This document shows positions 2,290-22,719 of a stretch of DNA of 64,000 bases, one piece after another. Both the position numbers and the translations under genes were made by a program. Every line of letters starts with the position of its first letter. Position 1 is the first letter of the stretch. The stretch spans positions 62,001 to 126,000 of IMG/VR virus record IMGVR_UViG_3300033153_007973. One strand, written 5' to 3'. The notes beneath the pieces were generated by a model. It was not told where the DNA came from, made no database searches, and saw only the letters and a program-made list of their open reading frames with translations.

Positions 2290-2571
2290 TGCCTTATGGC
2301 GGAAAGGGAGACGCAGGAGGGTAGGTGAGAGCACCAGCATCTGTGGCCAGGATGCTACACGACTGTGACAAGCAGGAGAGCAAACACCGTTAGCTTGGAG
2401 GATGAGCGGGATCCAAAGGGTGAGCGCGGACACCTACAGTGGTATGTCAGTGAGAAGAGCAGAAGTGTATGACCCAAAGTAAATGGCCTATGCTGACATG
2501 AAGCCGAGAATCTTGTCCGGCCAGATACCCACAAAAAGGTGCTCATTCCAGTTCGAGTCTGGATAAGGCAA
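2290..2571 (+). ncRNA. ~280-nt structured RNA with tRNA-like acceptor, D and T arms
   Basis: TGCCTTA/TAAGGCA stem; Leu-type D arm GCGGAAAGGGAGACGC; T arm TCCAG-TTCGAGT-CTGGA; long-range internal helices. Confidence 0.7.
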
Positions 2572-2586
2572 ATGTGTAAAATGATC

Positions 2587-2664
2587 GCGGGACGGCATAA
2601 GAGGCAGGGGAGCCTTGTTGGTTTCATACGCCATCGCCTGACGAGTTCGACTCTCGGTCCCGCT
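2587..2664 (+). tRNA. atypical tRNA, anticodon CAT
   Basis: GCGGGAC/GTCCCGC; TGGT-TTCATAC-GCCA; CGAG-TTCGACT-CTCG; irregular D region. Confidence 0.55.
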
Positions 2665-2668
2665 AACT

Positions 2669-2785
2669 TGTGGGTGGTACGCACCAATAGAAAGGTGTAC
2701 GCGGCAGAGCCACCGGATCGGTCGCGTGGTCCCTCTCAGATGGCCACTGAAACCTTTGTCAGGTTGAATTCCTGACCCACCCACA
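2669..2785 (+). ncRNA. tRNA-like RNA without canonical anticodon arm
   Basis: 9-bp terminal stem TGTGGGTGG/CCACCCACA; T-like arm GTCAGG-TTGAATT-CCTGAC; D-like hairpin GCACC/GGTGT. Confidence 0.6.
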
Positions 2786-2807: not shown

Positions 2808-3323
2808 ATGATACCAACAGAGAGTGCCTGGGACCTGTATTACCGCGTATTCAATGACAATGATGATGTCTATGTGATCACTGATAGTGATGAAGCATAC
2901 TGGGGTAAGGCACACGCCACCCAGACAGGACTTCTGCTATCTCATCCTAACGTAGTGGACAGGTTCTTAGATTGGGATGATATTACGTTTATGGCACATG
3001 ATGGATTCCCTGTCCGCAAGCTGATGGGAGCTGATGGATCAAAGGCGATCGAGAAGACGAATACCAATACGATCGAGGCAGGTATCAGGAAGCTCCTGAC
3101 TAAGAACCCAAGCATCACAGATGGTCCGCGGGTGAAGCAGGCAGTATTCGGAGATCCGTTCCTGGTCGAGAATGTCGAAGCTACTCTGATGAATACATAT
3201 TATCCCGGGAACCACATCTGGGAACCAGAACACGAGGAGCTGATCATCCTCAAGGCGCCGGATGGTGCAGTTGGTCTTCTGTATGAACTGAACCGTATAT
3301 ATCATTTTGATGCGCGGGAGTAG
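2808..3323 (+). CDS. hypothetical protein
   Basis: AGGAG SD; 171 aa; stop codon inside tRNA-Gly. Confidence 0.8.
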   Translation: MIPTESAWDLYYRVFNDNDDVYVITDSDEAYWGKAHATQTGLLLSHPNVVDRFLDWDDITFMAHDGFPVRKLMGADGSKAIEKTNTNTIEAGIRKLLTKNPSITDGPRVKQAVFGDPFLVENVEATLMNTYYPGNHIWEPEHEELIILKAPDGAVGLLYELNRIYHFDARE

Positions 3324-3385
3324 CTCAGGGGTAGAGCGCCTGCTTGCCATGCAGGAGGTCGAGGGTTCGAATCCCTTTTCCCGCT
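3314..3385 (+). tRNA. tRNA-Gly(GCC)
   Basis: cloverleaf; CCTGC-TTGCCAT-GCAGG. Confidence 0.95.
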
Positions 3386-3397
3386 CAGGAGGAAAGA

Positions 3398-3484
3398 ATG
3401 AGAAACGAAGAACAGGAAATACTGAAGATCCTTGGAATTCTCATTTTGACAGGAATTCTTCTTGCAATTTTCTTCTCTTTCTGA
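3398..3484 (+). CDS. 28-aa single-TM peptide MRNEEQEILKILGILILTGILLAIFFSF
   Basis: AGGAGG SD; manual translation. Confidence 0.6.
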   Translation: MRNEEQEILKILGILILTGILLAIFFSF

Positions 3485-3499
3485 TAATATAGATTATAT

Positions 3500-3571
3500 G
3501 CGGATAAGGTGTTAATGGCTGCACGGGAGCCTTCCAAGCTTTCGGATCGGGTTCGATTCCCGATATCCGCT
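3500..3571 (+). tRNA. tRNA-Gly(TCC)
   Basis: cloverleaf; loop CTTCCAA. Confidence 0.93.
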
Positions 3572-3578
3572 CATGAAT

Positions 3579-3652
3579 GGCTGCGTAGCGTAGCGGTCTA
3601 ACGCACCGCCCTGTCAAGGCGGGGATCGACGGTTCGAATCCGTTCGTGGCCG
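3579..3652 (+). tRNA. tRNA-Asp(GTC)
   Basis: cloverleaf; loop CTGTCAA; G73. Confidence 0.95.
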
Positions 3653-3654
3653 AT

Positions 3655-3728
3655 GCACCCTTAGCTCAGCTGGCTAGAGCAAGCGGTCGATAACCGCTAG
3701 GTCCCTGGTTCGAGTCCAGGAGGGTGCA
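3655..3728 (+). tRNA. tRNA-Ile(GAT), C33
   Basis: cloverleaf; AGCGG-TCGATAA-CCGCT. Confidence 0.92.
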
Positions 3729-3729
3729 C

Positions 3730-3954
3730 ATGATTGAGATATTAACTATAGTGGCTGCAATCGCTGAGATTGCTGGTATCTATCTTCTGGGTCAGAAAAA
3801 GAAGCTCGGGTTTATTCTGGGTTCAATTTCTGGTGTGCTCTGGGTCGCCTATACTGTGATAACCGGGAATGCGATCGGTCTTGTAATCGTATGTTCCGTA
3901 ACCTTTGTTCTTAATGGACGAGGATTCTTCAAGTGGAGGAAAGAAGAGACATGA
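3730..3954 (+). CDS. PnuC-like three-helix membrane protein
   Basis: three hydrophobic segments; GIYLLGQKKKLGF...LW...GFFKW pattern resembles half of PnuC. Confidence 0.55.
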   Translation: MIEILTIVAAIAEIAGIYLLGQKKKLGFILGSISGVLWVAYTVITGNAIGLVIVCSVTFVLNGRGFFKWRKEET

Positions 3955-4604
3955 ATACATTCATGAAGATTATCAACAAGATATTTAAGAAGAATCCTGG
4001 AAGAAATAAGTGGATGTTGAAAGCTGCTCAGAATGGTGATGTTCTCCTAATTGGTTGCGATAGATTTACTACCAACCTAACATCTAAGCTTCTTCACGAG
4101 GGAATTATCAAGTTTACTGGTGGAAAGTGGTCTCATTCTGGAATCATCAAGATCATAAGAGGTGAGACCAATGTCATAGAAGCAACCAGTGATGGAGTCA
4201 TAACCACTCCATTATGGAGATATATGACATCTAATGGTATATCATATAACATGAAGATTAAGAGAGTCCAAGAAGAACACATCTCACAAGCAAAGAAAGC
4301 GGCATGCAATGCCAAGAAACACAAGGGCAAAAAGTATGATTATGTAGCAGTGATCAATTTGGCCGGTTATATTCTCTATACGAAACAGAAGAGAAAAGGT
4401 CTATCATTGCCGAATGCAGAAGACATCTTCGGCAGAAACACTCCCGATCTCTTTATTTGTTCAGAGCTTGTTCATGCTGCATATAGAGAAGCTGGAATAT
4501 GTCTGTGTGATTTCGTAGAGGATCCAGATGAACAAGAAGCACTGGTAACTCCTCGAGATCTGGACGAATCCAAATATCTACACGATGTGAGAAAACCTAA
4601 ATAA
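3951..4604 (+). CDS. permuted papain-like NlpC/P60 (YiiX/YaeF-type) cysteine hydrolase
   Basis: GDVLL, WSHSGI, IEAT..GV, KKYDY, FICSELV, VTPRDL with His before Cys. Confidence 0.85.
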   Translation: MNTFMKIINKIFKKNPGRNKWMLKAAQNGDVLLIGCDRFTTNLTSKLLHEGIIKFTGGKWSHSGIIKIIRGETNVIEATSDGVITTPLWRYMTSNGISYNMKIKRVQEEHISQAKKAACNAKKHKGKKYDYVAVINLAGYILYTKQKRKGLSLPNAEDIFGRNTPDLFICSELVHAAYREAGICLCDFVEDPDEQEALVTPRDLDESKYLHDVRKPK

Positions 4605-4608
4605 ATCG

Positions 4609-4637
4609 TTGACAAGAAGAAACTTGTGCTTTATAAT
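4609..4637 (+). promoter_or_regulatory. sigma70-type promoter
   Basis: TTGACA-17-TATAAT. Confidence 0.85.
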
Positions 4638-4778
4638 GACACATAGATTAGAGAAAGAAACCAACCAACGCCCGCGGAGGACTATAACATGAAACTATCA
4701 CCTACCTCATTAGAAATTCCCCTTAGTAAGCTAGCCGCGCGGGCATCATTTAGTTATCAGCATATATCTGAACTTCTT

Positions 4779-4850
4779 GGCTCCGTAGTCTAGCGGCTAG
4801 GACACCAGGTTTTCATCCTGGGGGTGGGAGTTCGATTCTCCCCGGAGCTA
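4779..4850 (+). tRNA. tRNA-Glu(TTC)
   Basis: cloverleaf; CCAGG-TTTTCAT-CCTGG. Confidence 0.93.
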
Positions 4851-4854
4851 ATAT

Positions 4855-4926
4855 GTCAGGGGTAACTCAATGGTAGAGTGCACGACTGTGACTCGTGTTA
4901 CGGGGGTTCGATTCCCCTTCCTTGAC
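4855..4926 (+). tRNA. tRNA-His(GTG)
   Basis: cloverleaf with encoded G-1:C73; loop CTGTGAC. Confidence 0.93.
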
Positions 4927-4939
4927 CAAAGGAGATTGA

Positions 4940-5488
4940 ATGGCTAATGTCAGAGATAGCATAGGTAAGATGAGCAAAGTACATTTAATAGATGTCATTG
5001 CTGATGTTGCGATTTATCTCTCATTCCAGCAACATACCCGGAATAAGGATCTGGCGCATGTGGAAAAACTAGAAAAATGCTTGACAACTCTGGAATCATT
5101 GAAGAACTGGAGGACGAAGAAATCTTTGGAAGGGAAGATGAAAACCAAGGAACCTTTAGCATTAACCAATGATATGTTGTTTGATCCAGTAGCTCAAGAG
5201 GAGGTAAATAAGTCTGGCCGTGGTGTGAAGATTAAGAAATCGCCACCAAAGAAACAGGTCAAAAAGAAAACAAAGAGAACAAATGCAACACATACTCATG
5301 AGTTGACACAGGATGAAATAGAAGCACTATTATCAGCTATATCAGATAATCCACCGATAATAGGGTCTGATTCTCTGGAGGAACTCTCGATAAGAGATCG
5401 ACCCCGTCGGCGTCAATCATTTTATAGCCGAACACGGAGCAGACATATACGAATACGAATGGACAGAGAAAGGAAATCACCAGAATAA
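4940..5488 (+). CDS. hypothetical protein with FliM-N-like peptide
   Basis: AAGGAG SD; ELTQDEIEALLSAIS. Confidence 0.75.
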   Translation: MANVRDSIGKMSKVHLIDVIADVAIYLSFQQHTRNKDLAHVEKLEKCLTTLESLKNWRTKKSLEGKMKTKEPLALTNDMLFDPVAQEEVNKSGRGVKIKKSPPKKQVKKKTKRTNATHTHELTQDEIEALLSAISDNPPIIGSDSLEELSIRDRPRRRQSFYSRTRSRHIRIRMDRERKSPE

Positions 5489-5490
5489 TT

Positions 5491-5575
5491 GGAGAGGTGC
5501 GAGAGCGGTTGAATCGGGCTCCCTGCTAAGGAGTTGGGTGTAACAGCCCCGGGGGTTCGAATCCCTCCCTCTCCG
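5491..5575 (+). tRNA. tRNA-Ser(GCT)
   Basis: cloverleaf with long variable arm; G73. Confidence 0.95.
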
Positions 5576-5599
5576 AACTAACTTAAAAAGGAGAAGTAG

Positions 5600-5875
5600 A
5601 TGCCAGACGAAACAAAGATTGTAATACCAAAAAAGGTTCCAAGTAAGAAAGAAGTAGAGGTCATGCAACATGGTGCACAGTGGATCAATGAAGGTAATGA
5701 AATAACATGTCCAGAATGCATGTCGCGTAGTCCAAGGATCAGATGTACTGTAGATAAAGGATTTGATCTCTCTACGGCAAAGGATCCAAATATTGGAAGA
5801 GCAACACATAAGTATATTGCAAAATGTCAATGTACTTTATGTAGTTGCGCATTCGAGATCAGACGCAGCGAGTAG
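5600..5875 (+). CDS. Zn-ribbon hypothetical protein
   Basis: AAGGAG SD; CPEC...CTLC. Confidence 0.75.
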   Translation: MPDETKIVIPKKVPSKKEVEVMQHGAQWINEGNEITCPECMSRSPRIRCTVDKGFDLSTAKDPNIGRATHKYIAKCQCTLCSCAFEIRRSE

Positions 5876-5881
5876 CTAGAC

Positions 5882-5969
5882 GGAGCGGTATCCAAGTCCG
5901 GTTGAAGGAGTCGCACTGTAAATGCGATGCCACGTGCTAAACTCGATGGTTCGAATCCATCCCGCTCCA
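5882..5969 (+). tRNA. tRNA-Tyr(GTA)
   Basis: cloverleaf; TCGCA-CTGTAAA-TGCGA. Confidence 0.92.
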
Positions 5970-5983
5970 ATTGGGTAATGAAT

Positions 5984-6131
5984 CCGGTAATTTTGGTTAC
6001 CGATATTAACGGAAACCGGTAACATGTGTTACCGGAATACCAATACCCGATAAGGTATAATATGTTGGTAGTTATACCCGAAAGGGATGATTTACTGATA
6101 AGATATTAGTAATTATACCCGAACGGGTATA
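5984..6131. repeat. array of six short palindromes
   Basis: 2x CCGGTAA-N6-TTACCG, 3x ATACCCGA..GG(TAT), 1x TTACTGATA-AGA-TATTAGTAA. Confidence 0.8.
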
Positions 6132-6132
6132 T

Positions 6133-6214
6133 GGAGAGGTGGACAACGGTTGTCGAACGGTTTTGAAAACCGTCGCTGGTAAAACAGTTGCAGGTTCGAA
6201 TCCTGTCCTCTCCG
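6133..6214 (+). tRNA. tRNA-Ser(TGA)
   Basis: ACGGT-TTTGAAA-ACCGT; variable arm; G73. Confidence 0.9.
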
Positions 6215-6215
6215 C

Positions 6216-6431
6216 ATGTGTGACAGAGCAGAAGATTGGGACCTAATGATCCGCGCTGAAGCAAAATGCACGGGCGCTAATGTTCACAGGATTCATACCC
6301 TTACATGCTTGCTGGATGGTGCATGGTCGCTCAAACAGGAGAATAGGGAAGATGCTAAAGAATGGCGGAAAGAACTAGTACAATTTGTTTATGGACGCAC
6401 TCGTGCTGGAATGGTAGACAGGTCTGGTTGA
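6216..6431 (+). CDS. possible hypothetical protein
   Basis: fills spacer but has no SD and ends inside tRNA-Leu. Confidence 0.35.
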   Translation: MCDRAEDWDLMIRAEAKCTGANVHRIHTLTCLLDGAWSLKQENREDAKEWRKELVQFVYGRTRAGMVDRSG

Positions 6432-6480
6432 GAACCAGGTGTCAGTAATGGGCGTGTGAGTTCGACTCTCACCGGGTGCA
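6397..6480 (+). tRNA. tRNA-Leu(GAG)
   Basis: cloverleaf with variable arm. Confidence 0.94.
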
Positions 6481-6485
6481 TATGC

Positions 6486-6556
6486 ACACCTATAGCTCAG
6501 GGGCAGAGCAGGAGACCTTTAATCTTTTGACGGTGGTTCGATTCCACCTAGGTGTA
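6486..6556 (+). tRNA. tRNA-Lys(TTT), C33
   Basis: GGAGA-CCTTTAA-TCTTT. Confidence 0.88.
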
Positions 6557-6580
6557 AACCTCTCGAGTTCGAGAGGTTTA
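6555..6580. repeat. perfect 12-bp inverted repeat between the two tRNA-Lys genes
   Basis: TAAACCTCTCGA-GT-TCGAGAGGTTTA. Confidence 0.8.
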
Positions 6581-6583
6581 GAA

Positions 6584-6657
6584 GGACGTGTAACTCAACT
6601 AGGTAGAGTAGCGGGCCCTTAACCCGCAAGTTGTGGGTTCGATTCCCACCGCGTTCA
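6584..6657 (+). tRNA. tRNA-Lys(CTT), C33
   Basis: GCGGG-CCCTTAA-CCCGC. Confidence 0.92.
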
Positions 6658-6658
6658 G

Positions 6659-6760
6659 ATGTTCACGAAGGCTCAACAAAGCCCGACGACACCCGATGCT
6701 AGATCAGGCTGAGGGACGCATGCAGAGGCCGAGTTGTTCAGAGCTGGATCTTTGTGACAT
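6659..6760 (+). ncRNA. putative rod-like structured RNA
   Basis: nested helices TCACGAAG/CTTTGTGA, GCTC/GAGC, AACAA/TTGTT. Confidence 0.45.
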
Positions 6761-6768
6761 GTACAAAA

Positions 6769-6847
6769 GAAGCCGTAGTGTAGAGGCAGCACACCGCCGG
6801 GTAACAACTGTGCGGAGGGGTTATGGTTCAATACCTAGCCGGCTTCC
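6769..6847 (+). tRNA. atypical tRNA with extended anticodon arm (loop GTAACAA)
   Basis: GAAGCCG/CGGCTTC; D arm GTGT/GCAC; bulged T arm GG-TTCAATA-CC. Confidence 0.55.
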
Positions 6848-6852
6848 AAGTG

Positions 6853-6932
6853 ACAGTGTCGGGGCGAGGTCGCGACCACTTCGTGGTCCTCGATAGAAAG
6901 GGTGTGCACACCGCCTTTAGCCCCCGTACTGT
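6853..6932 (+). ncRNA. putative three-way-junction RNA
   Basis: closing ACAGTG-T-CGGGG/CCCCG-TACTGT plus two internal hairpins. Confidence 0.5.
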
Positions 6933-6937
6933 TTTAT

Positions 6938-7010
6938 GGGCTTGTAGCTCTAATGGGAGAGCGCCTCGCTTGCACCGAGGATGTTGCTGGTTCGAATCCA
7001 GTCAGGTCCA
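6938..7010 (+). tRNA. tRNA-Ala(TGC)
   Basis: cloverleaf; G3:U70. Confidence 0.95.
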
Positions 7011-7015
7011 CAATT

Positions 7016-7090
7016 AGCGGGATTGCCTAATTGGCTAAGGCACCAGTCTCTGACACTGGTTTATTGAAGGTTCGAATCCTTCTCCCGCCG
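7016..7090 (+). tRNA. tRNA-Gln(CTG)
   Basis: CCAGT-CTCTGAC-ACTGG; unpaired 1:72; G73. Confidence 0.92.
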
Positions 7091-7106
7091 GAATTATAGG
7101 AGTGAT

Positions 7107-7181
7107 ATGACAGAATTGATGGTAATAGGGTTGATTCTTTTGTGGGGTTTTGGTTTATGGCTCATGGATAAACATTGCTAG
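7107..7181 (+). CDS. 24-aa single-TM peptide MTELMVIGLILLWGFGLWLMDKHC
   Basis: AGGAG SD; manual translation. Confidence 0.55.
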   Translation: MTELMVIGLILLWGFGLWLMDKHC

Positions 7182-7228
7182 TTTGCGTCGAATATTTCCG
7201 TAATCGACGCAGATTTTGCGTCGAATAT

Positions 7229-7302
7229 GCGCTCATAGACCAACGGCAGAGTCAAGGGCCTTAAAAGCCCTCAAGTGATGGGTTCGAATCCCTCTGGGCG
7301 CA
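7229..7302 (+). tRNA. tRNA with TAA (Leu) anticodon and short variable loop
   Basis: AGGGC-CTTAAAA-GCCCT; A73; no long V arm. Confidence 0.85.
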
Positions 7303-7312
7303 AAGGAGAACA

Positions 7313-7384
7313 ATGGAGATTCTAATCATAGTAGTGATAGTCTTAGCAATTTGTGCTATCGATGTGATAGTAAAAAAGAAGTAG
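7313..7384 (+). CDS. 23-aa single-TM peptide MEILIIVVIVLAICAIDVIVKKK
   Basis: AAGGAG SD; stop shares its G with G1 of tRNA-Phe. Confidence 0.55.
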   Translation: MEILIIVVIVLAICAIDVIVKKK

Positions 7385-7455
7385 CCGAGATAGCTCAATG
7401 GGCAGAGCAGGGGATTGAAGATCCTCAAGCGGAGGTCCGAATCCTCCTCTTGGCA
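7384..7455 (+). tRNA. tRNA-Phe(GAA)
   Basis: cloverleaf; T loop TCCGAAT (C55). Confidence 0.9.
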
Positions 7456-7456
7456 A

Positions 7457-7810
7457 ATGAATCGACGAGATAAAATTGTATCGTTCTTACGTAAGCCATA
7501 TCGGAAGGTAAATCCATATGGTCGTATGATGTGTAAGTGTGGTAATTTACAGGTGCACAGTCTTAGGTGGTGCCCTGATTGCGGTGGCGAATACGCCGAT
7601 GATCCATGCAATATGACATTCTGTGATGTTATTATGAGACAGGTAACTGAGAATCCTAGATATCAAAAAGAAGATGGTTATGTTGGATACCTATGGTGGG
7701 AAGCACTACTCAGTAGGTCTATCGGAGTTGGACCAATACCTGCCGCTGAGCTTAAAGATCTGCATGAACAGACATTAAAGGAGGTGCGACATGAAAGATC
7801 TCTAGATTAA
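7457..7810 (+). CDS. Zn-ribbon hypothetical protein
   Basis: first ATG after tRNA-Phe; CKCG...CPDCG. Confidence 0.65.
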   Translation: MNRRDKIVSFLRKPYRKVNPYGRMMCKCGNLQVHSLRWCPDCGGEYADDPCNMTFCDVIMRQVTENPRYQKEDGYVGYLWWEALLSRSIGVGPIPAAELKDLHEQTLKEVRHERSLD

Positions 7811-7825
7811 TCAAGGAGGTTAGAC

Positions 7826-8083
7826 ATGTCACGATCATATAAGAAGAATCCAGGCTACATAGATGGTCCACATGGTGATCATAAACGGTGGGCAAACAAG
7901 GTGGTGCGTAGAACAAAAGATGTCCCAGATGGTTGTCTATATAAGAAACATTATCCACAGTGGGACATCTGCGACTTCAAGTGTATCTACTATAGTAACA
8001 AAGAATGGTTGCGTTACTCCGCTCCAAATAGGACAGAGTTTGGATCAGAATATGACGAACCATATAGAGCAAGAATGAAATAG
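7826..8083 (+). CDS. basic hypothetical protein (MSRSYKK...ANKxVR...WDICD type)
   Basis: AAGGAGG SD; pattern recalled from phage hypothetical proteins. Confidence 0.8.
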   Translation: MSRSYKKNPGYIDGPHGDHKRWANKVVRRTKDVPDGCLYKKHYPQWDICDFKCIYYSNKEWLRYSAPNRTEFGSEYDEPYRARMK

Positions 8084-8088
8084 ATAGA

Positions 8089-8168
8089 GCACTCGTGGTG
8101 GAACTGGCAGACACGCTAGACTTAGAATCTAGTGCGAAAGCATGAGGGTTCGACTCCCTCCGAGTGCA
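8089..8168 (+). tRNA. tRNA-Leu(TAG)
   Basis: cloverleaf with variable arm. Confidence 0.95.
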
Positions 8169-8171
8169 CAG

Positions 8172-8252
8172 GCACTTGTGGCGAAATGGCATACGCGCAC
8201 GGTTCAGAGCCGTGTCCCATTCGGGTTGGTGGTTCGAGTCCACTCAGGTGCA
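8172..8252 (+). tRNA. tRNA-Leu(CAG)
   Basis: cloverleaf with variable arm. Confidence 0.94.
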
Positions 8253-8302
8253 AATATGTATTTTAATTTACGAATACGTTAATTCGAATACATAATTGCC
8301 TT

Positions 8303-8418
8303 GGGCGACATTAATTCAATGGCCAGAGCGAGAGGCACGCGTAGTATGAGGCCTGAGTGAGTTATAGAAATGGGACAGCTTGTCCCTATGTGCGGGTTCG
8401 AATCCCGCATGTCGCCCA
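8303..8418 (+). ncRNA. tRNA-like RNA with two hairpins replacing the anticodon arm
   Basis: GGGCGACAT/ATGTCGCCC; GCGGG-TTCGAAT-CCCGC; D-like TTCAATGGCCAGAG. Confidence 0.65.
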
Positions 8419-8421
8419 CTT

Positions 8422-8494
8422 GCATCCATAGCTCAGTTGGCAGAGCACCTGTTTTACACGCAGGGTGTCGGAGGTTCGATTCCTTCTGGATGCA
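8422..8494 (+). tRNA. tRNA-Val(TAC)
   Basis: cloverleaf; loop TTTACAC. Confidence 0.95.
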
Positions 8495-8499
8495 CAGAT

Positions 8500-8583
8500 G
8501 TGCTGGTTTCCCTCCCGGCGCCCAATATTGTGTTTATGGACTGGGGAGAGTCGTTATGGAGCTCTCCCCTTAGTCCTGCAAAT
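8500..8583 (+). repeat. two-hairpin element, copy 1
   Basis: GTGCTGG/CCGGCGC then GGACTGGGGAGAG/CTCTCCCC..AGTCC-TGCA. Confidence 0.7.
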
Positions 8584-8656
8584 GGTCTTGTAGCTCAATC
8601 GGTAGAGCACCATACTCATAATGTGAGGGTTGGTGGTTCGAGTCCACCCAAGACCA
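8584..8656 (+). tRNA. tRNA-CAT (elongator Met or lysidine Ile2)
   Basis: cloverleaf; loop CTCATAA. Confidence 0.92.
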
Positions 8657-8681
8657 ATAGCTAGCCGATTCCAAGGACGCC

Positions 8682-8769
8682 GCGCGGGTTTCCCCCTTTT
8701 TCCCGCGCCAATTTGATTAGGACTGGGGGAGAGTTGATGTGGAACTCTCCCCCGGGATCCTGCAGATGG
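8682..8769 (+). repeat. two-hairpin element, copy 2
   Basis: GCGCGGG/CCCGCGC then GGACTGGGGGAGAG/CTCTCCCCC..TCC-TGCA. Confidence 0.7.
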
Positions 8770-8776
8770 AGAGAAG

Positions 8777-9175
8777 ATGAAATATTATACAGGTACCATA
8801 CCGCTAAACCCCAAGCTATATGAGAATGATTATATCGACTGTCTCGAGATTGCATCAATCAAACTGGGTGATGATCTCAGTTTCATGACAAGTAATCGAG
8901 TACGTAAGCTGTTAGAAATGACACGTGATGATCCAGAATGTGATCCCGAGGTCCAGAGTGTGGTATCAGTTGAAGCACTGAAGCGTGCTATGGCAGGAGA
9001 TCCTGAAATGGGCATTGCTGGGAGCATGACCACAATGAGAGCTGGAATTCCGAATCAAATTAATATCCACCACCATCATTTACAACCAGTAACACACATA
9101 GAGATCTCTGGCACATTAGTTGATCCTAGTATCTTTGAAGATGCATATTCAGGAGAGATTATTTTACCTGATTAA
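8777..9175 (+). CDS. hypothetical protein
   Basis: GGAG SD; 132 aa. Confidence 0.75.
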   Translation: MKYYTGTIPLNPKLYENDYIDCLEIASIKLGDDLSFMTSNRVRKLLEMTRDDPECDPEVQSVVSVEALKRAMAGDPEMGIAGSMTTMRAGIPNQINIHHHHLQPVTHIEISGTLVDPSIFEDAYSGEIILPD

Positions 9176-20445: not shown

Positions 20446-22719
20446 ATGCCAGATAATATAACAAGAGAAGATTATGATAGTACATCATATCGTCCTCGTG
20501 CTACATCCCAGACAGCACGAGCAGATCGTGAAGCTGTAATAACTAAAGTCAAGAACGTAAGATTAGATAACCCACCAAAAGCAATGCCAGAATTTCCAGC
20601 TATTGATTTCAACAATGCTGAGGAAGTAACACCTGCACAAGCAAGAGAATTAATCAATAGGACACAAGATGAGTTGCAGAGTGTGGATGCTCGAATCAGT
20701 GCTGCAGAAGACATCCTTTATTCCAGCAATTCAATGCTTGGACATTATTCAAATGAAGAATATCCGCGACTGAATCGAGCGATGCGAGATCTTCTTGGAG
20801 TAGGTGACCTTGTACAAGAGGATGGATTTGATCTCACACCAGAAACACTTGCATGTATCAATAAAATCGCAACATATTCAGAACCCGCACCCACACAAGC
20901 GGAACTGCAAGATCCAGATGCTCTAACTGAAAAGATTGAAAAGAATTTCCCTACCAAAGAGCAACTTTGGCCAGGCCTTCTCTATCGCCTATTCTTCATG
21001 TTCTTTACTCTTACTGTGAAATATATCTTTACATCATTGTGTAAGATGTCGAGAGTGTTACCGGATGAGATTATTGGAATTGATGTCGGAATAGCAATAA
21101 GAAAGATGTTCAAGAAAGCTGCAAATTATCTCTTCTATATCATCAATAATCTGTCAGCAAAGGTAAATCCTAAGATTATAGGTGTGAAATCATATCATTC
21201 ATTTCAAGCATATCTCAAAGAGAAGAGTGTCGATGTATGTTCAAAACAATCGATGGATGAACTAGAAGATCCAGATACAATGAGCAGTGTGGTTGATCAA
21301 TATACTATTCAGGAAGAAGGGTGTAAGCAATGCAACGAGGGATGCAAACCTACCCCAGAACAACCGGGCCTTGCAAAACAAGCCATTAAGGAATTATTAA
21401 TAGCTCAAATAAAGAACAAGTCAAACACAAAGACAGACATATCATCAACCCTTATTCTAGAACAACTAAAGAATCAGAGTAAGAATATAAAAGAATCTCT
21501 AACTGGATATGAAATTGCTATCGAGGATAAACCATCTGGAGAAGCAAGCGTTCTTGGAACAGTTCGAGGTACCATTCTTGGTCATCTTATTATGATTGAA
21601 GAGCTTGTGCGCGGAATGGATATCACTGTATCCAGAGTCATTAATCTAGAATTCATTTCTCCCGCGGCTAAGGACTTTGTGTGTTGTTTCGTCAGACTAA
21701 TATTCTTTGCGTTTGCTGATGCTGATAAATTGGGTAGCGATGTAACCGAGTTCCTAAAGGATGGTCTTGATTCCAAGAACATTAACAAGAAACTCCAACC
21801 AAATAAGCAGACTATTGCTATTCTCAAGATGCTCGATAGTGTTCTCTCATATATGATGGGACAGGCACAATATAATATGCTCATCCAGCTACCAATCGAT
21901 TCTGAATTCATCATGGGTGCTATGAAACAAGCACTTGCAGAAACGTTAACTATGTTTAATGAGACAATTAGCTTTCCCATCAATGTTGCATTTACAAAGA
22001 TGTTTGAAATCCCAAGCTTTAAGGTTGCTGCTGAGTTGTGTGTTCCATTCTCATACGTTGCAAATCTAGCCACTTGTGGCTTTCAGATGTTGCAAAATAA
22101 GATATACGAACTCATTGCAAAGCTCTGGATGGAGGGAAACGAGACAATGAAATCATTTGATTCGTTCCTTACATTGTCACTGAGAGTCAAGAATCTGAAG
22201 ATCTTCTCATCCCTAATCAACTTTGTACTAGACAATACAGCAGCACTCCAGCAGTTCTGTGATGTGGATAAGCTAACCACACCAGAAGAGATAGAAAGAA
22301 TTAAGACAATGTTGGAGAATGAAATTCCTGTTACTGTATATGACGATCGCGTTCCGGTGCCAGATGATAATAATTCAGATGCAGCAAAGAAGACTAAAAT
22401 ACTGATGACTCCTATATTTAAAGCAGATGATCCGATTGGCCCAGATGATAATGACTTTATCAATAGTCAATATGGGAGAGGATTGGCTGGAGAATTTGGT
22501 GAACTAGACATGGAACTATCTCCTATGTATGTAGAGCCAGAGGAATTAGAGAAGAAATGGGCAATAGAAGTACCCATTAAAGACTCAAAGACAATCACTC
22601 TCAGAGCAGCTATTGGCTGTGGTAATGACTTTAAGGAAATTCTTGCAGAATCAGCATCAGCAATGAAAGAACTAAAAGACGAGAATGTTATAAGCCATCT
22701 AAAGCTGCGAAACCAGTAG
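20446..22719 (+). CDS. large helical hypothetical protein between TerL and portal
   Basis: 757-aa ORF. Confidence 0.75.
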   Translation: MPDNITREDYDSTSYRPRATSQTARADREAVITKVKNVRLDNPPKAMPEFPAIDFNNAEEVTPAQARELINRTQDELQSVDARISAAEDILYSSNSMLGHYSNEEYPRLNRAMRDLLGVGDLVQEDGFDLTPETLACINKIATYSEPAPTQAELQDPDALTEKIEKNFPTKEQLWPGLLYRLFFMFFTLTVKYIFTSLCKMSRVLPDEIIGIDVGIAIRKMFKKAANYLFYIINNLSAKVNPKIIGVKSYHSFQAYLKEKSVDVCSKQSMDELEDPDTMSSVVDQYTIQEEGCKQCNEGCKPTPEQPGLAKQAIKELLIAQIKNKSNTKTDISSTLILEQLKNQSKNIKESLTGYEIAIEDKPSGEASVLGTVRGTILGHLIMIEELVRGMDITVSRVINLEFISPAAKDFVCCFVRLIFFAFADADKLGSDVTEFLKDGLDSKNINKKLQPNKQTIAILKMLDSVLSYMMGQAQYNMLIQLPIDSEFIMGAMKQALAETLTMFNETISFPINVAFTKMFEIPSFKVAAELCVPFSYVANLATCGFQMLQNKIYELIAKLWMEGNETMKSFDSFLTLSLRVKNLKIFSSLINFVLDNTAALQQFCDVDKLTTPEEIERIKTMLENEIPVTVYDDRVPVPDDNNSDAAKKTKILMTPIFKADDPIGPDDNDFINSQYGRGLAGEFGELDMELSPMYVEPEELEKKWAIEVPIKDSKTITLRAAIGCGNDFKEILAESASAMKELKDENVISHLKLRNQ

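What the first reader, a model, noticed from the sequence alone, without database searches (positions are those of the whole stretch)
8303..8418. 116-nt tRNA-like RNA with perfect T arm but no anticodon arm
Seen: 9-bp terminal stem, GCGGG-TTCGAAT-CCCGC, a D loop with GG, then AGGC/GCCT and GGGACA/TGTCCC hairpins. With 2290 and 2669 this gives three RNAs that keep the elbow recognised by RNase P, CCA enzyme and EF-Tu but replace the decoding part. Inference: a tRNA scaffold used to stabilise cargo RNA or act as a decoy.
Basis: partly seen in the sequence, partly recalled or inferred. Interest (0 to 1): 0.6.

Follow-up and report, generated by a model that had tools for sequence, protein, structure and literature searches.

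The report
Anticodon-less tRNA-like RNA in phage
Inside the tRNA gene cluster of an uncultivated 234-kb bacteriophage lies a 116-base gene that keeps the top half of a tRNA intact but has no anticodon loop. It cannot decode, and it most resembles the still-unexplained "species 1" small RNA of phage T4.

Summary
The described features are present at 8303-8418: a 9-bp terminal stem, a canonical T arm, a D-like segment with GG, and two hairpins. This tRNA "top half" geometry is far above chance. Rfam's tRNA model scores it 34.1 bits (threshold 29), but only with relaxed filters and with a 49-nt insert where the anticodon loop belongs.

No anticodon-type stem-loop exists, and none of 1,767 possible single excisions gives a convincing one, so splicing to a normal tRNA is unlikely.

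The best reading is a tRNA-derived, non-decoding small RNA, possibly of tRNA-Gly ancestry. It would be co-transcribed with the array and matured by the tRNA-processing enzymes.

Its architecture matches T4 species 1 RNA (rnaC), whose fold I confirmed by covariation. A covariance model of rnaC does not recognise it, so it is an analogue and not a homologue.

There are three caveats:
- Only one sequence is available, identical in two samples, so covariation cannot be tested.
- A related phage lacks the element.
- Thermodynamic folding pairs the "D-loop GG" into another helix.

A decaying pseudogene remains a serious rival. The scaffold or decoy function is untested.

The parts
8303..8418 (+).
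8305..8311 (+). 5' strand of the canonical 7-bp acceptor stem (GCGACAU). G8303 and G8304 add two extra pairs with C8416 and C8417, and G8304 would be a G-1 paired to C73.
   Evidence: Rfam alignment. The stem is identical to the acceptor of Vibrio phage RYC tRNA-Gly(UCC).
8312..8329 (+). D-arm-like segment: U8, A9, stem UUC/GAG (8315-8317/8326-8328, plus an A.C at 8314/8329), and loop AAUGGCCA with G18 G19 at 8321-8322.
   Evidence: alignment. Predicted pairing probability about 0. The fold is +7.2 kcal/mol, at the edge of the 0-7.1 range of real tRNAs in the array.
8312..8364 (+). Alternative long arm of the minimum-free-energy fold: helix UAAUUCA/UGAGUUA (8312-8318/8358-8364), then GGCC/GGCC (8321-8324/8350-8353), capped by a 25-nt purine-rich loop. 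It is mutually exclusive with the D arm.
   Evidence: probabilities 0.81-0.96.
8330..8371 (+). Insert of 41-42 nt between the D segment and the next hairpin, where a tRNA has the single base 26.
   Evidence: Alignment to tRNA-Gly genes. No similarity elsewhere.
8372..8386 (+). Closed hairpin GGGACA-GCU-UGUCCC (6 bp with a 3-nt loop, or 5 bp with a 5-nt loop) in the anticodon-arm position. It is too short to present an anticodon.
   Evidence: Pairing probability about 1.0. It aligns with the anticodon arm of RYC tRNA-Gly. No U33/R37 loop exists.
8387..8391 (+). Five-base variable-loop equivalent, UAUGU.
   Evidence: RYC tRNA-Gly has UAUC here.
8392..8408 (+). T arm GCGGG-UUCGAAU-CCCGC, with 5 Watson-Crick pairs and a canonical T loop.
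8409..8417 (+). 3' strand of the terminal stem (AUGUCGC plus CC). No CCA is encoded in register, as in the other tRNAs of this array.
8250..8299 (+). Imperfect 23-nt-arm palindrome filling the spacer between tRNA-Leu(CAG) and the element. It is a likely RNA hairpin or processing spacer. In the related phage L092 it is conserved but lies between the two Leu tRNAs.
8422..8495 (+). tRNA-Val(UAC), 3 nt downstream. RNase P cleavage at its 5' end would define the 3' trailer of the element.
   Evidence: The processing step is inferred.

Best explanation
The element is a tRNA-derived, non-decoding, tRNA-like small RNA gene in the tRNA array of a 234-kb phage of a bacterium.

Shown:
- The acceptor/T-arm half is intact and has canonical geometry (7 + 5 bp, T loop UUCGAAU).
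- The anticodon arm is replaced by a closed hairpin with a 3-5-nt loop.
- An insert of 41-42 nt sits between the D segment and that hairpin.
- The gene lies on the same strand as the tRNAs, 3 nt upstream of tRNA-Val.

Inferred:
- It is transcribed as part of the polycistronic tRNA precursor.
- RNase P cuts its 5' end at or near G8305, possibly leaving G-1.
- RNase P cleavage of the downstream tRNA-Val plus exonuclease trimming define its 3' end, and the host CCA-adding enzyme completes it.
- The minihelix therefore serves as a processing and stability handle for an RNA of about 112-116 nt that cannot read codons.
- What the lower half does is unknown. The most likely roles are binding or titrating a protein that recognises tRNA shape, or carrying the insert as a stable structured module.

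It works like T4 species 1 RNA (rnaC) but is not its homologue.
For: - Top-half geometry is far above chance, and Rfam tRNA scores 34.1 bits with a 49-nt insert.
- No anticodon-type loop exists. Of 1,767 single excisions, only 2 give a loop with U33 and R37, and both have 3 or fewer Watson-Crick stem pairs.
- All 20 pairs of the acceptor, T stem and hairpin are Watson-Crick.
- The sequence is identical in two independent assemblies from different samples, so it is not an assembly artefact.
- The acceptor and T arm are identical to a tRNA-Gly(UCC) of Vibrio phage RYC, and the hairpin plus UAU align with that tRNA's anticodon arm and variable loop.
- Precedent: T4 rnaC has a 7-bp acceptor, a long arm, a hairpin and a T arm, with 22 of 46 pairs showing compensatory changes. 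It lies between tRNA genes in relatives and is a stable RNA of unknown role.
- At least one further long RNA in the same window, at 2290-2572, keeps the same intact top half.
- The host is bacterial: tRNA-Tyr is class II and tRNA-His has an encoded G-1:C73. No protein-dependent tRNA-splicing endonuclease is therefore expected.
Against: - Only one sequence version exists, so covariation cannot be tested.
- A related phage (79-90% nucleotide identity in flanking genes) has tRNA-Leu(CAG) joined directly to tRNA-Val, without the element.
- The energy model pairs the D-loop GG elsewhere.
- There are no expression data.
- The insert matches no known RNA motif or target.
- The rnaC covariance model scores it at 10.1 bits, E 0.2, below ordinary tRNAs of the array.
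Confidence: 0.5

Rival explanations
1. It is a decaying tRNA pseudogene. A former tRNA gene, probably tRNA-Gly-like, lost its anticodon arm through an insertion and a small loop deletion. It may still be transcribed and processed but does nothing.
For: - The element is absent from the related phage L092, where Leu(CAG) is followed after 2 nt by Val. The surrounding segment is in flux: the palindromic spacer has moved, and tRNA-Met and the 132-aa ORF are also missing there.
- No homologue exists in IMG/VR, the metagenomes, cultured phages or GTDB genomes.
- Other degenerate tRNA-like genes occur in the same array, at 2591-2665 and 6770-6847, seen only at relaxed ARAGORN thresholds.
Against: - All 20 pairs of three helices are perfect Watson-Crick while the decoding part is entirely gone.
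- The same pattern, a perfect top half with a non-tRNA lower half, recurs at 2290-2572 and in part at 2669-2785. Independent neutral decay is unlikely to produce this repeatedly.
- The T4 precedent shows that such RNAs can be under strong structural selection.
Confidence: 0.28
2. It is an intron-containing tRNA gene whose insert is removed to give a functional tRNA.
For: - Rfam aligns it as a tRNA with a 49-nt insert at the anticodon loop.
- ARAGORN at an 80% threshold proposes Thr(AGU) with a 17-nt intron.
- Long tRNA genes with perfect anticodon stems around loops of 37-57 nt do occur in phage and metagenome contigs (L005, L007, L041, L038).
Against: - No flanking anticodon stem exists. The Rfam stem AGAGG/UCCCU has an A.C mismatch and competes with the 6-bp hairpin, with pairing probability 0.00.
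- The exhaustive excision scan gives no product with a sound stem plus U33 and R37.
- The insert is too short for a group I intron, and no ribozyme or intron family is hit.
- The host is bacterial.
Confidence: 0.05
3. It belongs to another known tRNA-like RNA class: tmRNA, Y-RNA-like YrlA, or tRNA-Sec/allo-tRNA.
For: It has a tRNA-like top half with a non-tRNA lower half. A potential stack of 9 + 5 bp is longer than 7 + 5. Some jumbo phages encode Ro/TROVE proteins, which use tRNA-like partner RNAs (PMC7824862).
Against: - No Rfam hit to tmRNA or YrlA appears even at E up to 10. Lower-scoring overlapping matches to families of the tRNA clan were suppressed by the tool, and I did not see which families they were.
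- ARAGORN finds no tmRNA here.
- The pair at 3:70 is G:C, not G:U.
- The RNA ends lie at the acceptor stem, not at a Ro-binding stem.
- There is no UCA anticodon loop.
- At 116 nt it is far shorter than a tmRNA.
Confidence: 0.03
4. It is a DNA-level feature, for example an attachment or recombination site carrying part of a tRNA gene, and not an RNA gene.
For: It lies at a rearrangement-prone junction next to a conserved palindrome.
Against: Both acceptor strands, a D-like segment and a full T arm are present. An att site normally carries only the 3' part of a tRNA. No bacterial genome holds the matching 3' half as a tRNA.
Confidence: 0.03

Closest known systems
Bacteriophage T4 species 1 RNA (rnaC / RNAC), and its neighbour species 2 RNA (rnaD)
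   Same: - Both are small RNA genes inside a phage tRNA cluster, directly flanked by tRNA genes.
- Both have a 7-bp acceptor-type terminal stem abutting a canonical T arm, a long irregular arm, a closed hairpin where the anticodon arm would be, and no anticodon loop.
- The function of the T4 RNA is still unknown (PMC3014915; PMC9697503).
   Different: - There is no detectable homology. The rnaC covariance model gives 10.1 bits, E 0.2, lower than for ordinary tRNAs of the array.
- The element is 116 nt against 139 nt.
- It retains a plausible D arm with G18 G19.
- rnaC is conserved in 740 phage records, whereas this element is known from one phage and is missing in that phage's relative.
Canonical tRNA (Rfam RF00005), specifically tRNA-Gly(UCC) of Vibrio phage RYC
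   Same: The 7-bp acceptor stem and the 17-nt T arm are identical. Both have a G1-C2-G3 start and a similar short variable loop. The element exceeds the Rfam gathering score.
   Different: The element has no 7-nt anticodon loop and carries a 41-42-nt insert after the D segment. Its discriminator is C rather than U. Default tRNA finders miss it. No tRNA with the same top half was found in IMG/VR.
Engineered 'tRNA scaffold' RNAs, in which cargo RNA inserted in place of the anticodon arm is stabilised in E. coli (my own knowledge: Ponchon and Dardel 2007)
   Same: The design principle is the same: an intact acceptor, T arm and D arm with foreign sequence in the lower half, relying on the tRNA-processing enzymes.
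   Different: Those scaffolds are man-made. Here the insert sits between the D segment and a retained hairpin, and nothing shows that it is a functional cargo.
Long 'five-arm' tRNA genes in uncultivated phage tRNA arrays found here (L013/L036 and L023/L067/L085)
   Same: These also carry an extra stretch of about 45 nt with a hairpin between the D arm and the next arm, and they lie inside phage tRNA arrays.
   Different: They keep a canonical 5-bp/7-nt anticodon arm (AUGAUAA or ACGAUAA, and AUCCAAA) and share a conserved insert sequence (CTTAA...hairpin...CAGC) that is absent here.
Bacterial Y-RNA-like YrlA and tmRNA tRNA-like domains
   Same: Both are tRNA mimics that keep T-arm and D-loop features but do not decode by an anticodon.
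   Different: YrlA has its ends in the Ro-binding stem and a closed acceptor. tmRNA is about 260-400 nt with G3:U70 and a tag reading frame. None of these features is present, and no Rfam match was found.

Membership tests
Canonical tRNA (RF00005) | 7-bp acceptor stem stacked on a 5-bp T stem, with a T loop of the UUCRANY type | tested here: met
   8305-8311/8409-8415 plus 8392-8408, all Watson-Crick.
Canonical tRNA (RF00005) | Score at or above the curated gathering threshold | tested here: met
   34.1 bits against 29, but only with relaxed filters. The default gathering scan and default ARAGORN miss it.
Canonical tRNA (RF00005) | D arm presenting G18 G19 to the T loop | tested here: inconclusive
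   The sequence allows it (U8, A14, G18 G19, A21; a 3-bp stem plus an A.C). The energy model prefers another helix by 7.2 kcal/mol. Real tRNAs of the array show penalties of up to 7.1.
Canonical tRNA (RF00005) | Anticodon arm: 5-bp stem and 7-nt loop with U33 and a purine at 37 | tested here: not met
   No such arm exists anywhere in the element. The hairpin in that position has a 3-5-nt loop.
Intron-containing tRNA | Removal of one contiguous insert restores a sound anticodon arm | tested here: not met
   1,767 excisions were tested. Forty-six pass ARAGORN, but only 2 have U33 and R37, each with 3 or fewer Watson-Crick stem pairs.
Intron-containing tRNA | A recognisable splicing apparatus: group I core or bulge-helix-bulge motif at the exon-intron junctions | tested here: not met
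   No intron or ribozyme family is hit at E up to 10. The insert is too short for group I. There is no anticodon stem on which to build a bulge-helix-bulge. The tRNA features indicate a bacterial host.
T4 species 1 RNA (rnaC) family | Sequence and structure homology to rnaC | tested here: not met
   Covariance model R1, built from 6 T-even-type phages, gives 10.1 bits, E 0.2 for 8338-8417, below ordinary tRNAs at 14.3.
T4 species 1 RNA (rnaC) family | Location within a phage tRNA cluster, same strand, a few bases from flanking tRNAs | tested here: met
   compared.
T4 species 1 RNA (rnaC) family | Accumulates as a stable processed RNA in infection | not testable with these tools
   No expression data are available.
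tmRNA | G3:U70 alanine identity pair, tag reading frame, pseudoknots, length about 260-400 nt | tested here: not met
   The 3:70 pair is G:C, the length is 116 nt, and neither ARAGORN nor Rfam finds a tmRNA.
YrlA / bacterial Y RNA | RNA ends in a Ro-binding stem, closed acceptor-like stem, Rfam model match | tested here: not met
   The ends lie at the acceptor stem and there is no Rfam match. The presence of a Ro/TROVE gene elsewhere in the 234-kb genome was not examined.
tRNA-Sec / allo-tRNA | 13-bp acceptor plus T stack (8/5, 9/4, 8/4 or 9/3), long variable arm, UCA or other anticodon in a 7-nt loop | tested here: not met
   The potential stack is 9 + 5 = 14 bp. There is no anticodon loop, and the best clan member is plain tRNA.

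The most novel reading that the evidence does not exclude
Jumbo phages may carry an undescribed class of tRNA-derived RNAs in which the acceptor/T-arm half is kept as a handle for RNase P, the CCA-adding enzyme and perhaps an aminoacyl-tRNA synthetase, while the lower half is rebuilt. In this phage, a tRNA-Gly-derived member with an extra arm and a sealed 'anticodon' hairpin would act as an uncleavable mimic. It would bind host tRNA-targeting immune nucleases, or toxins that attack the acceptor end, without being consumed. G-1:C73 is the main histidine identity mark in bacteria (my own knowledge). That would also give a testable function for the 50-year-old puzzle of T4 species 1 RNA.
Probability: 0.12. 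Interest if true: 0.75.

Novelty: new variant of a known kind. Interest (0 to 1): 0.42.

Why it matters
Phage tRNA arrays are now understood largely as counter-measures to host nucleases that cut tRNAs. The non-decoding tRNA-like RNAs that travel with them, known since the 1970s in T4, have no assigned function. An unrelated jumbo phage has built the same kind of RNA from a different tRNA. At least one more long RNA of this kind lies in the same array, and extra-arm tRNA genes occur in other uncultivated phages. Together these suggest a recurrent solution, not a T4 oddity. The element also shows that standard tRNA finders and default Rfam scans miss such genes. The value of this single case is limited by the lack of relatives and of expression data.

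Tried and rejected
- **Homologues.** I looked for homologues of the element by several routes. All found only the source contig or chance or T-arm-only matches:
  - exact and gapped DNA patterns in IMG/VR;
  - one metagenome scan, giving 68 loci with none similar in the insert;
  - one GTDB genome scan, giving a chance hit in a coding region;
  - blastn against cultured phages.
- **Relatives of the phage through proteins.**
  - The 1100-aa neighbour has no relatives.
  - Exact and cluster look-ups gave an identical copy in sample 3300033143 (L093) and one diverged relative without the element (L092).
  - Distant homologues of the 85-aa neighbour lie in unrelated contexts without tRNA arrays.
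- **Splicing.** Rejected.
- **Known RNA classes.** Group I intron, hammerhead or other ribozymes, tmRNA and YrlA are rejected. tRNA-Sec is rejected on the missing anticodon loop.
- **Antisense regulator.** No complementary site exists in the window at up to 3 mismatches. The host genome is unknown, so host targets could not be tested.
- **Own promoter.** A weak sigma-70-like site (TTTACG-18-CATAAT, 8267-8296) lies in the palindromic spacer. In the relative L092 the same CATAAT sits 3 nt from a tRNA 5' end, which argues against a promoter role.
- **Mini-ORF.** A mini-ORF in the insert (AUG AGG CCU GAG UGA after GAGAGG) was noted by eye and dismissed as too short to evaluate.
- **T4 rnaC membership.** Tested and not met.
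- **Neighbouring ORFs.** They have no Pfam or PHROG assignment that links them to RNA metabolism.

Full report
**Context.** The window is part of IMGVR_UViG_3300033153_007973, also known as Ga0366824_1000008. This is a 234-kb uncultivated phage contig. It carries a terminase and a long structural module. It has no close relative among cultured phages.

Positions 3314-8657 hold 20 tRNA genes that ARAGORN finds on the + strand, and Rfam confirms 19 of them. The tRNA-Tyr has a long variable arm, and tRNA-His has an encoded G-1 opposite C73. These are bacterial traits by established knowledge of tRNA classes, so the host is a bacterium.

**The observation.**
- a 9-bp Watson-Crick terminal stem (8303-8311/8409-8417);
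- the T arm GCGGG-UUCGAAU-CCCGC (8392-8408), which abuts the 3' strand of that stem;
- a segment AAUGGCCA with GG (8321-8322);
- AGGC/GCCU (8333-8336/8351-8354);
- GGGACA-GCU-UGUCCC (8372-8386).

The combination of a T arm and a directly adjoining 7-bp acceptor occurs 20 times in the window, against 0.14 times per dinucleotide shuffle. Eighteen of the 20 are in the array, including this element.

With relaxed filters, Rfam's tRNA model matches 8305-8416 at 34.1 bits (gathering score 29, E 7.6e-6 for the 201-nt scan). The alignment has a standard 7/5 acceptor/T geometry, U8, A14, G18 G19 and A21, and a 49-nt insert where the anticodon loop belongs. The default Rfam scan and default ARAGORN miss it. 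The sequence folds better than all 200 shuffles (z = -4.07). It is 100% identical in an independent assembly from another sample, L093, so it is not an assembly artefact.

**No decoding part, and no plausible splicing.** A scan for any 5-bp stem with a 7-nt loop carrying U33 and a purine at 37 finds only the T arm. I removed every contiguous stretch of 5-61 nt between positions 27 and 89 of the element, giving 1,767 variants, and ran ARAGORN on each:
- Forty-six variants pass.
- Most of these use the GGGACA/UGUCCC hairpin with loop CAGCUUG (A33, U37), or stems rich in G.U pairs.
- Only two have U33 and R37, and both have 3 or fewer Watson-Crick pairs in the stem.

Real long tRNA genes that I met in other phage and metagenome contigs have perfect 5-bp anticodon stems around their inserts (L005, L007, L041, L038). 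The insert is far too short for a group I intron, and no intron or ribozyme family is hit even at E up to 10. A bacterial host has no tRNA-splicing endonuclease (established knowledge).

**Anatomy.** The only database match outside the source contig is 24 of 24 bases to tRNA-Gly(UCC) of Vibrio phage RYC (E 0.01). Alignment shows three things:
- The RYC tRNA has the same acceptor stem (GCGACAU/AUGUCGC) and the same T arm.
- Its anticodon arm and 4-nt variable loop (UAUC) align with the element's hairpin 8372-8386 and UAUGU.
- The extra material is a block of 41-42 nt between the D segment and that hairpin.

The element is best described as a tRNA that is probably of Gly type. It starts G1-C2-G3 but has C73 instead of U73. 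Its anticodon loop has shrunk to 3-5 nt, and it has gained an insert at position 26. The ancestry is suggestive only. No tRNA with the same top half was found in IMG/VR or in 185,579 species genomes.

**Two competing folds.** The nearest-neighbour model prefers a cloverleaf-like four-way junction:
- the acceptor stem;
- a long arm formed by UAUUCA-type pairing of 8312-8318 with 8358-8364, plus GGCC/GGCC, with probabilities 0.8-0.96;
- the 6-bp hairpin;
- the T arm.

The fold with a D arm is 7.2 kcal/mol worse. As a calibration, the 20 accepted tRNAs of this array have cloverleaf penalties of 0 to 7.1 kcal/mol, median 2.2. The D-arm or elbow fold is therefore at the edge of what real tRNAs show and cannot be excluded. 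Only probing or covariation can decide.

**Comparison with T4 species 1 RNA.** T4 encodes two stable RNAs of unknown function in its tRNA cluster, rnaC and rnaD (PMC3014915; PMC9697503). rnaC has homologues in 740 phage records. An alignment of six diverse members shows the following:
- a 7-bp acceptor-type stem, perfect in phiR1-RT and with two U.U pairs in T4, abutting a T arm that covaries (CCGGG/CCCGG, CCUGG/CCAGG, CCAGG/CCUGG, CUUGG/CCAAG);
- a long arm and a 10-bp hairpin;
- compensatory changes in 22 of 46 pairs.

In COW86c and CW742 rnaC lies between tRNA-Trp and tRNA-Gly, a few bases from each. This is the same architecture and the same genomic setting as the element. A covariance model of rnaC, however, scores the element at 10.1 bits (E 0.2), below ordinary tRNAs of the array. 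The element works like rnaC, as far as anatomy can tell, but is not a member of that family.

**Variation among relatives.** A 3.2-kb contig from the same sample (L092) is a diverged relative, with 79-90% nucleotide identity in the flanking genes and an identical tRNA-Leu(UAG). Its order is tRNA-Leu(UAG), palindromic spacer, tRNA-Leu(CAG), then tRNA-Val 2 nt later. Three features of the window are missing there: the element, tRNA-Met (8583-8657) and the 132-aa ORF (8777-9175). In the window, the homologous palindrome (8250-8299) lies instead between tRNA-Leu(CAG) and the element. The element therefore sits in a rearranging part of the array and is not essential to this phage lineage. That fits an accessory gene as well as a pseudogene.

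**Weighing the explanations.**

For a functional non-decoding RNA:
- All 20 pairs in the three helices are perfect, although the decoding part has gone.
- At 2290-2572 there is an 8-bp acceptor, a D arm with GGG, a canonical T arm, an insert of about 200 nt, and no Rfam match.
- At 2669-2785 the resemblance is only partial.
- T4 rnaC is a strongly selected precedent.

For a pseudogene:
- The sequence is a singleton.
- It is absent from the relative.
- Other degenerate tRNA-like genes occur in the array.

I put the functional tRNA-like RNA at 0.5, the pseudogene at 0.28 and splicing at 0.05. Other known RNA classes and DNA-level explanations get about 0.03 each.

The 'scaffold or decoy' idea is reasonable and matches the engineered tRNA-scaffold principle (my own knowledge), but it has no direct support. 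The insert has no complement in the window and resembles no known motif.

**Mechanism proposed.** Every step below is inferred:
1. The element is co-transcribed with the neighbouring tRNAs.
2. The palindromic spacer forms a hairpin.
3. RNase P measures the 12-bp acceptor/T stack and cuts at or next to G8305. The two extra G:C pairs, with G-1:C73 as in tRNA-His, may shift the cut by one or two bases.
4. RNase P cleavage at tRNA-Val 3 nt downstream leaves a short trailer, which exonucleases remove.
5. CCA is added, as it must be for the other tRNAs of this array, none of which encodes CCA.

The product would be a stable RNA of about 112-116 nt (plus CCA) that cannot read a codon.

**Verdict.** This is a real, correctly described feature. 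It is a new, non-homologous variant of a known but unexplained kind of phage RNA. Its interest is moderate and is limited by single-sequence evidence.

Noticed in passing
window 2290-2572 (+): A 283-nt tRNA-like gene with an 8-bp acceptor (UUGCCUUA/UAAGGCAA), a D arm GCG-GAAAGGGAGA-CGC and a T arm UCCAG-UUCGAGU-CUGGA. About 200 nt replace the anticodon region. ARAGORN calls it a tRNA with a 199-201-nt intron. No Rfam family (group I intron, tmRNA) matches at E up to 1, and there is no G3:U70. An extended -10-like TGGTATAAT lies just upstream (2280-2288).
   Followed up: partly
window 2669-2785 (+) and 2585-2667 (+): A 117-nt RNA with a 9-bp terminal stem and a 6-bp T-like arm whose loop is UUGAAUU (no C56). 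Its D-like loop AAUAGAAA has no GG. Next to it is a degenerate tRNA-like gene (CAU) that ARAGORN sees only at a 90% threshold. Neither reaches any Rfam model.
   Followed up: partly
window 7228-7303 (+): A tRNA with anticodon UAA (Leu) is only 76 nt long with a 5-nt variable loop, so it has class I shape. Bacterial tRNA-Leu normally has a long variable arm, so its amino-acid identity is unclear.
   Followed up: no
window 6770-6847 (+): An odd tRNA-like gene, Val(AAC) by ARAGORN at a 90% threshold, with T loop GGUUCAAUACC, inside a highly structured 280-nt spacer (6658-6937).
   Followed up: no
window 8498-8582 and 8680-8770 (+): Two copies of a module about 85 nt long bracket tRNA-Met. Each has a GC-rich hairpin, then a hairpin GGACUGGGGAGAG...CUCUCCCC...GUCCUGCA(A/G)AUGG. 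The whole segment is absent from the relative L092.
   Followed up: partly
window 8250-8299; L092 829-874: A conserved palindromic spacer (arms about 17-23 nt) has changed place between two related phages. In L092 it lies between the two Leu tRNAs. In the window it lies between tRNA-Leu(CAG) and the tRNA-like element. It may be an RNA processing hairpin or a recombination hotspot.
   Followed up: partly
L013 1736-1827(-), L036 589-680(+), L023 5248-5344(-), L067 3729-3825(+), L085 1512-1609(-): Long tRNA genes in uncultivated phage tRNA arrays share a conserved insert of about 45 nt (CTTAA..hairpin with compensatory changes..CAGC..) between the D arm and a canonical anticodon arm. The loops are AUGAUAA or ACGAUAA (anticodon GAU) in one group and AUCCAAA (anticodon CCA) in the other. 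Acceptor stems and anticodons differ between the two groups, which points to an undescribed extra-arm or intron module.
   Followed up: partly
L004 4476-4568(+), L008, L056, L066 (human gut and other contigs); L005/L009/L049; L007 1922-2023(+); L041/L045/L064: These recurrent tRNA genes have inserts of 30-57 nt in or beside the anticodon loop, flanked by good anticodon stems. Some lie in phage tRNA arrays: L007 is next to a normal tRNA-Met. In L004 the insert forms a long helix extending the anticodon stem. The removal mechanism in bacterial phages is unclear, and some of the metagenome hits may be archaeal.
   Followed up: partly
window 3722-3840 (+) and 21990-22065 (-): These are two further matches to the 'T arm plus adjoining 7-bp acceptor' geometry outside accepted tRNAs. 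The first overlaps the end of tRNA-Ile and a called 74-aa ORF. The second lies inside the 757-aa ORF. They are probably chance matches (0.14 expected per shuffle) or degenerate remnants.
   Followed up: no
L014 (T4 AF158101 70908-71046) and relatives L087-L091: T4 rnaC has a covariation-supported 7-bp acceptor-type stem directly abutting its T arm, so the whole 139-nt RNA is one oversized tRNA-like fold. It has no Rfam family, and one weak tRNA-Sec alignment was the only hit on it.
   Followed up: yes
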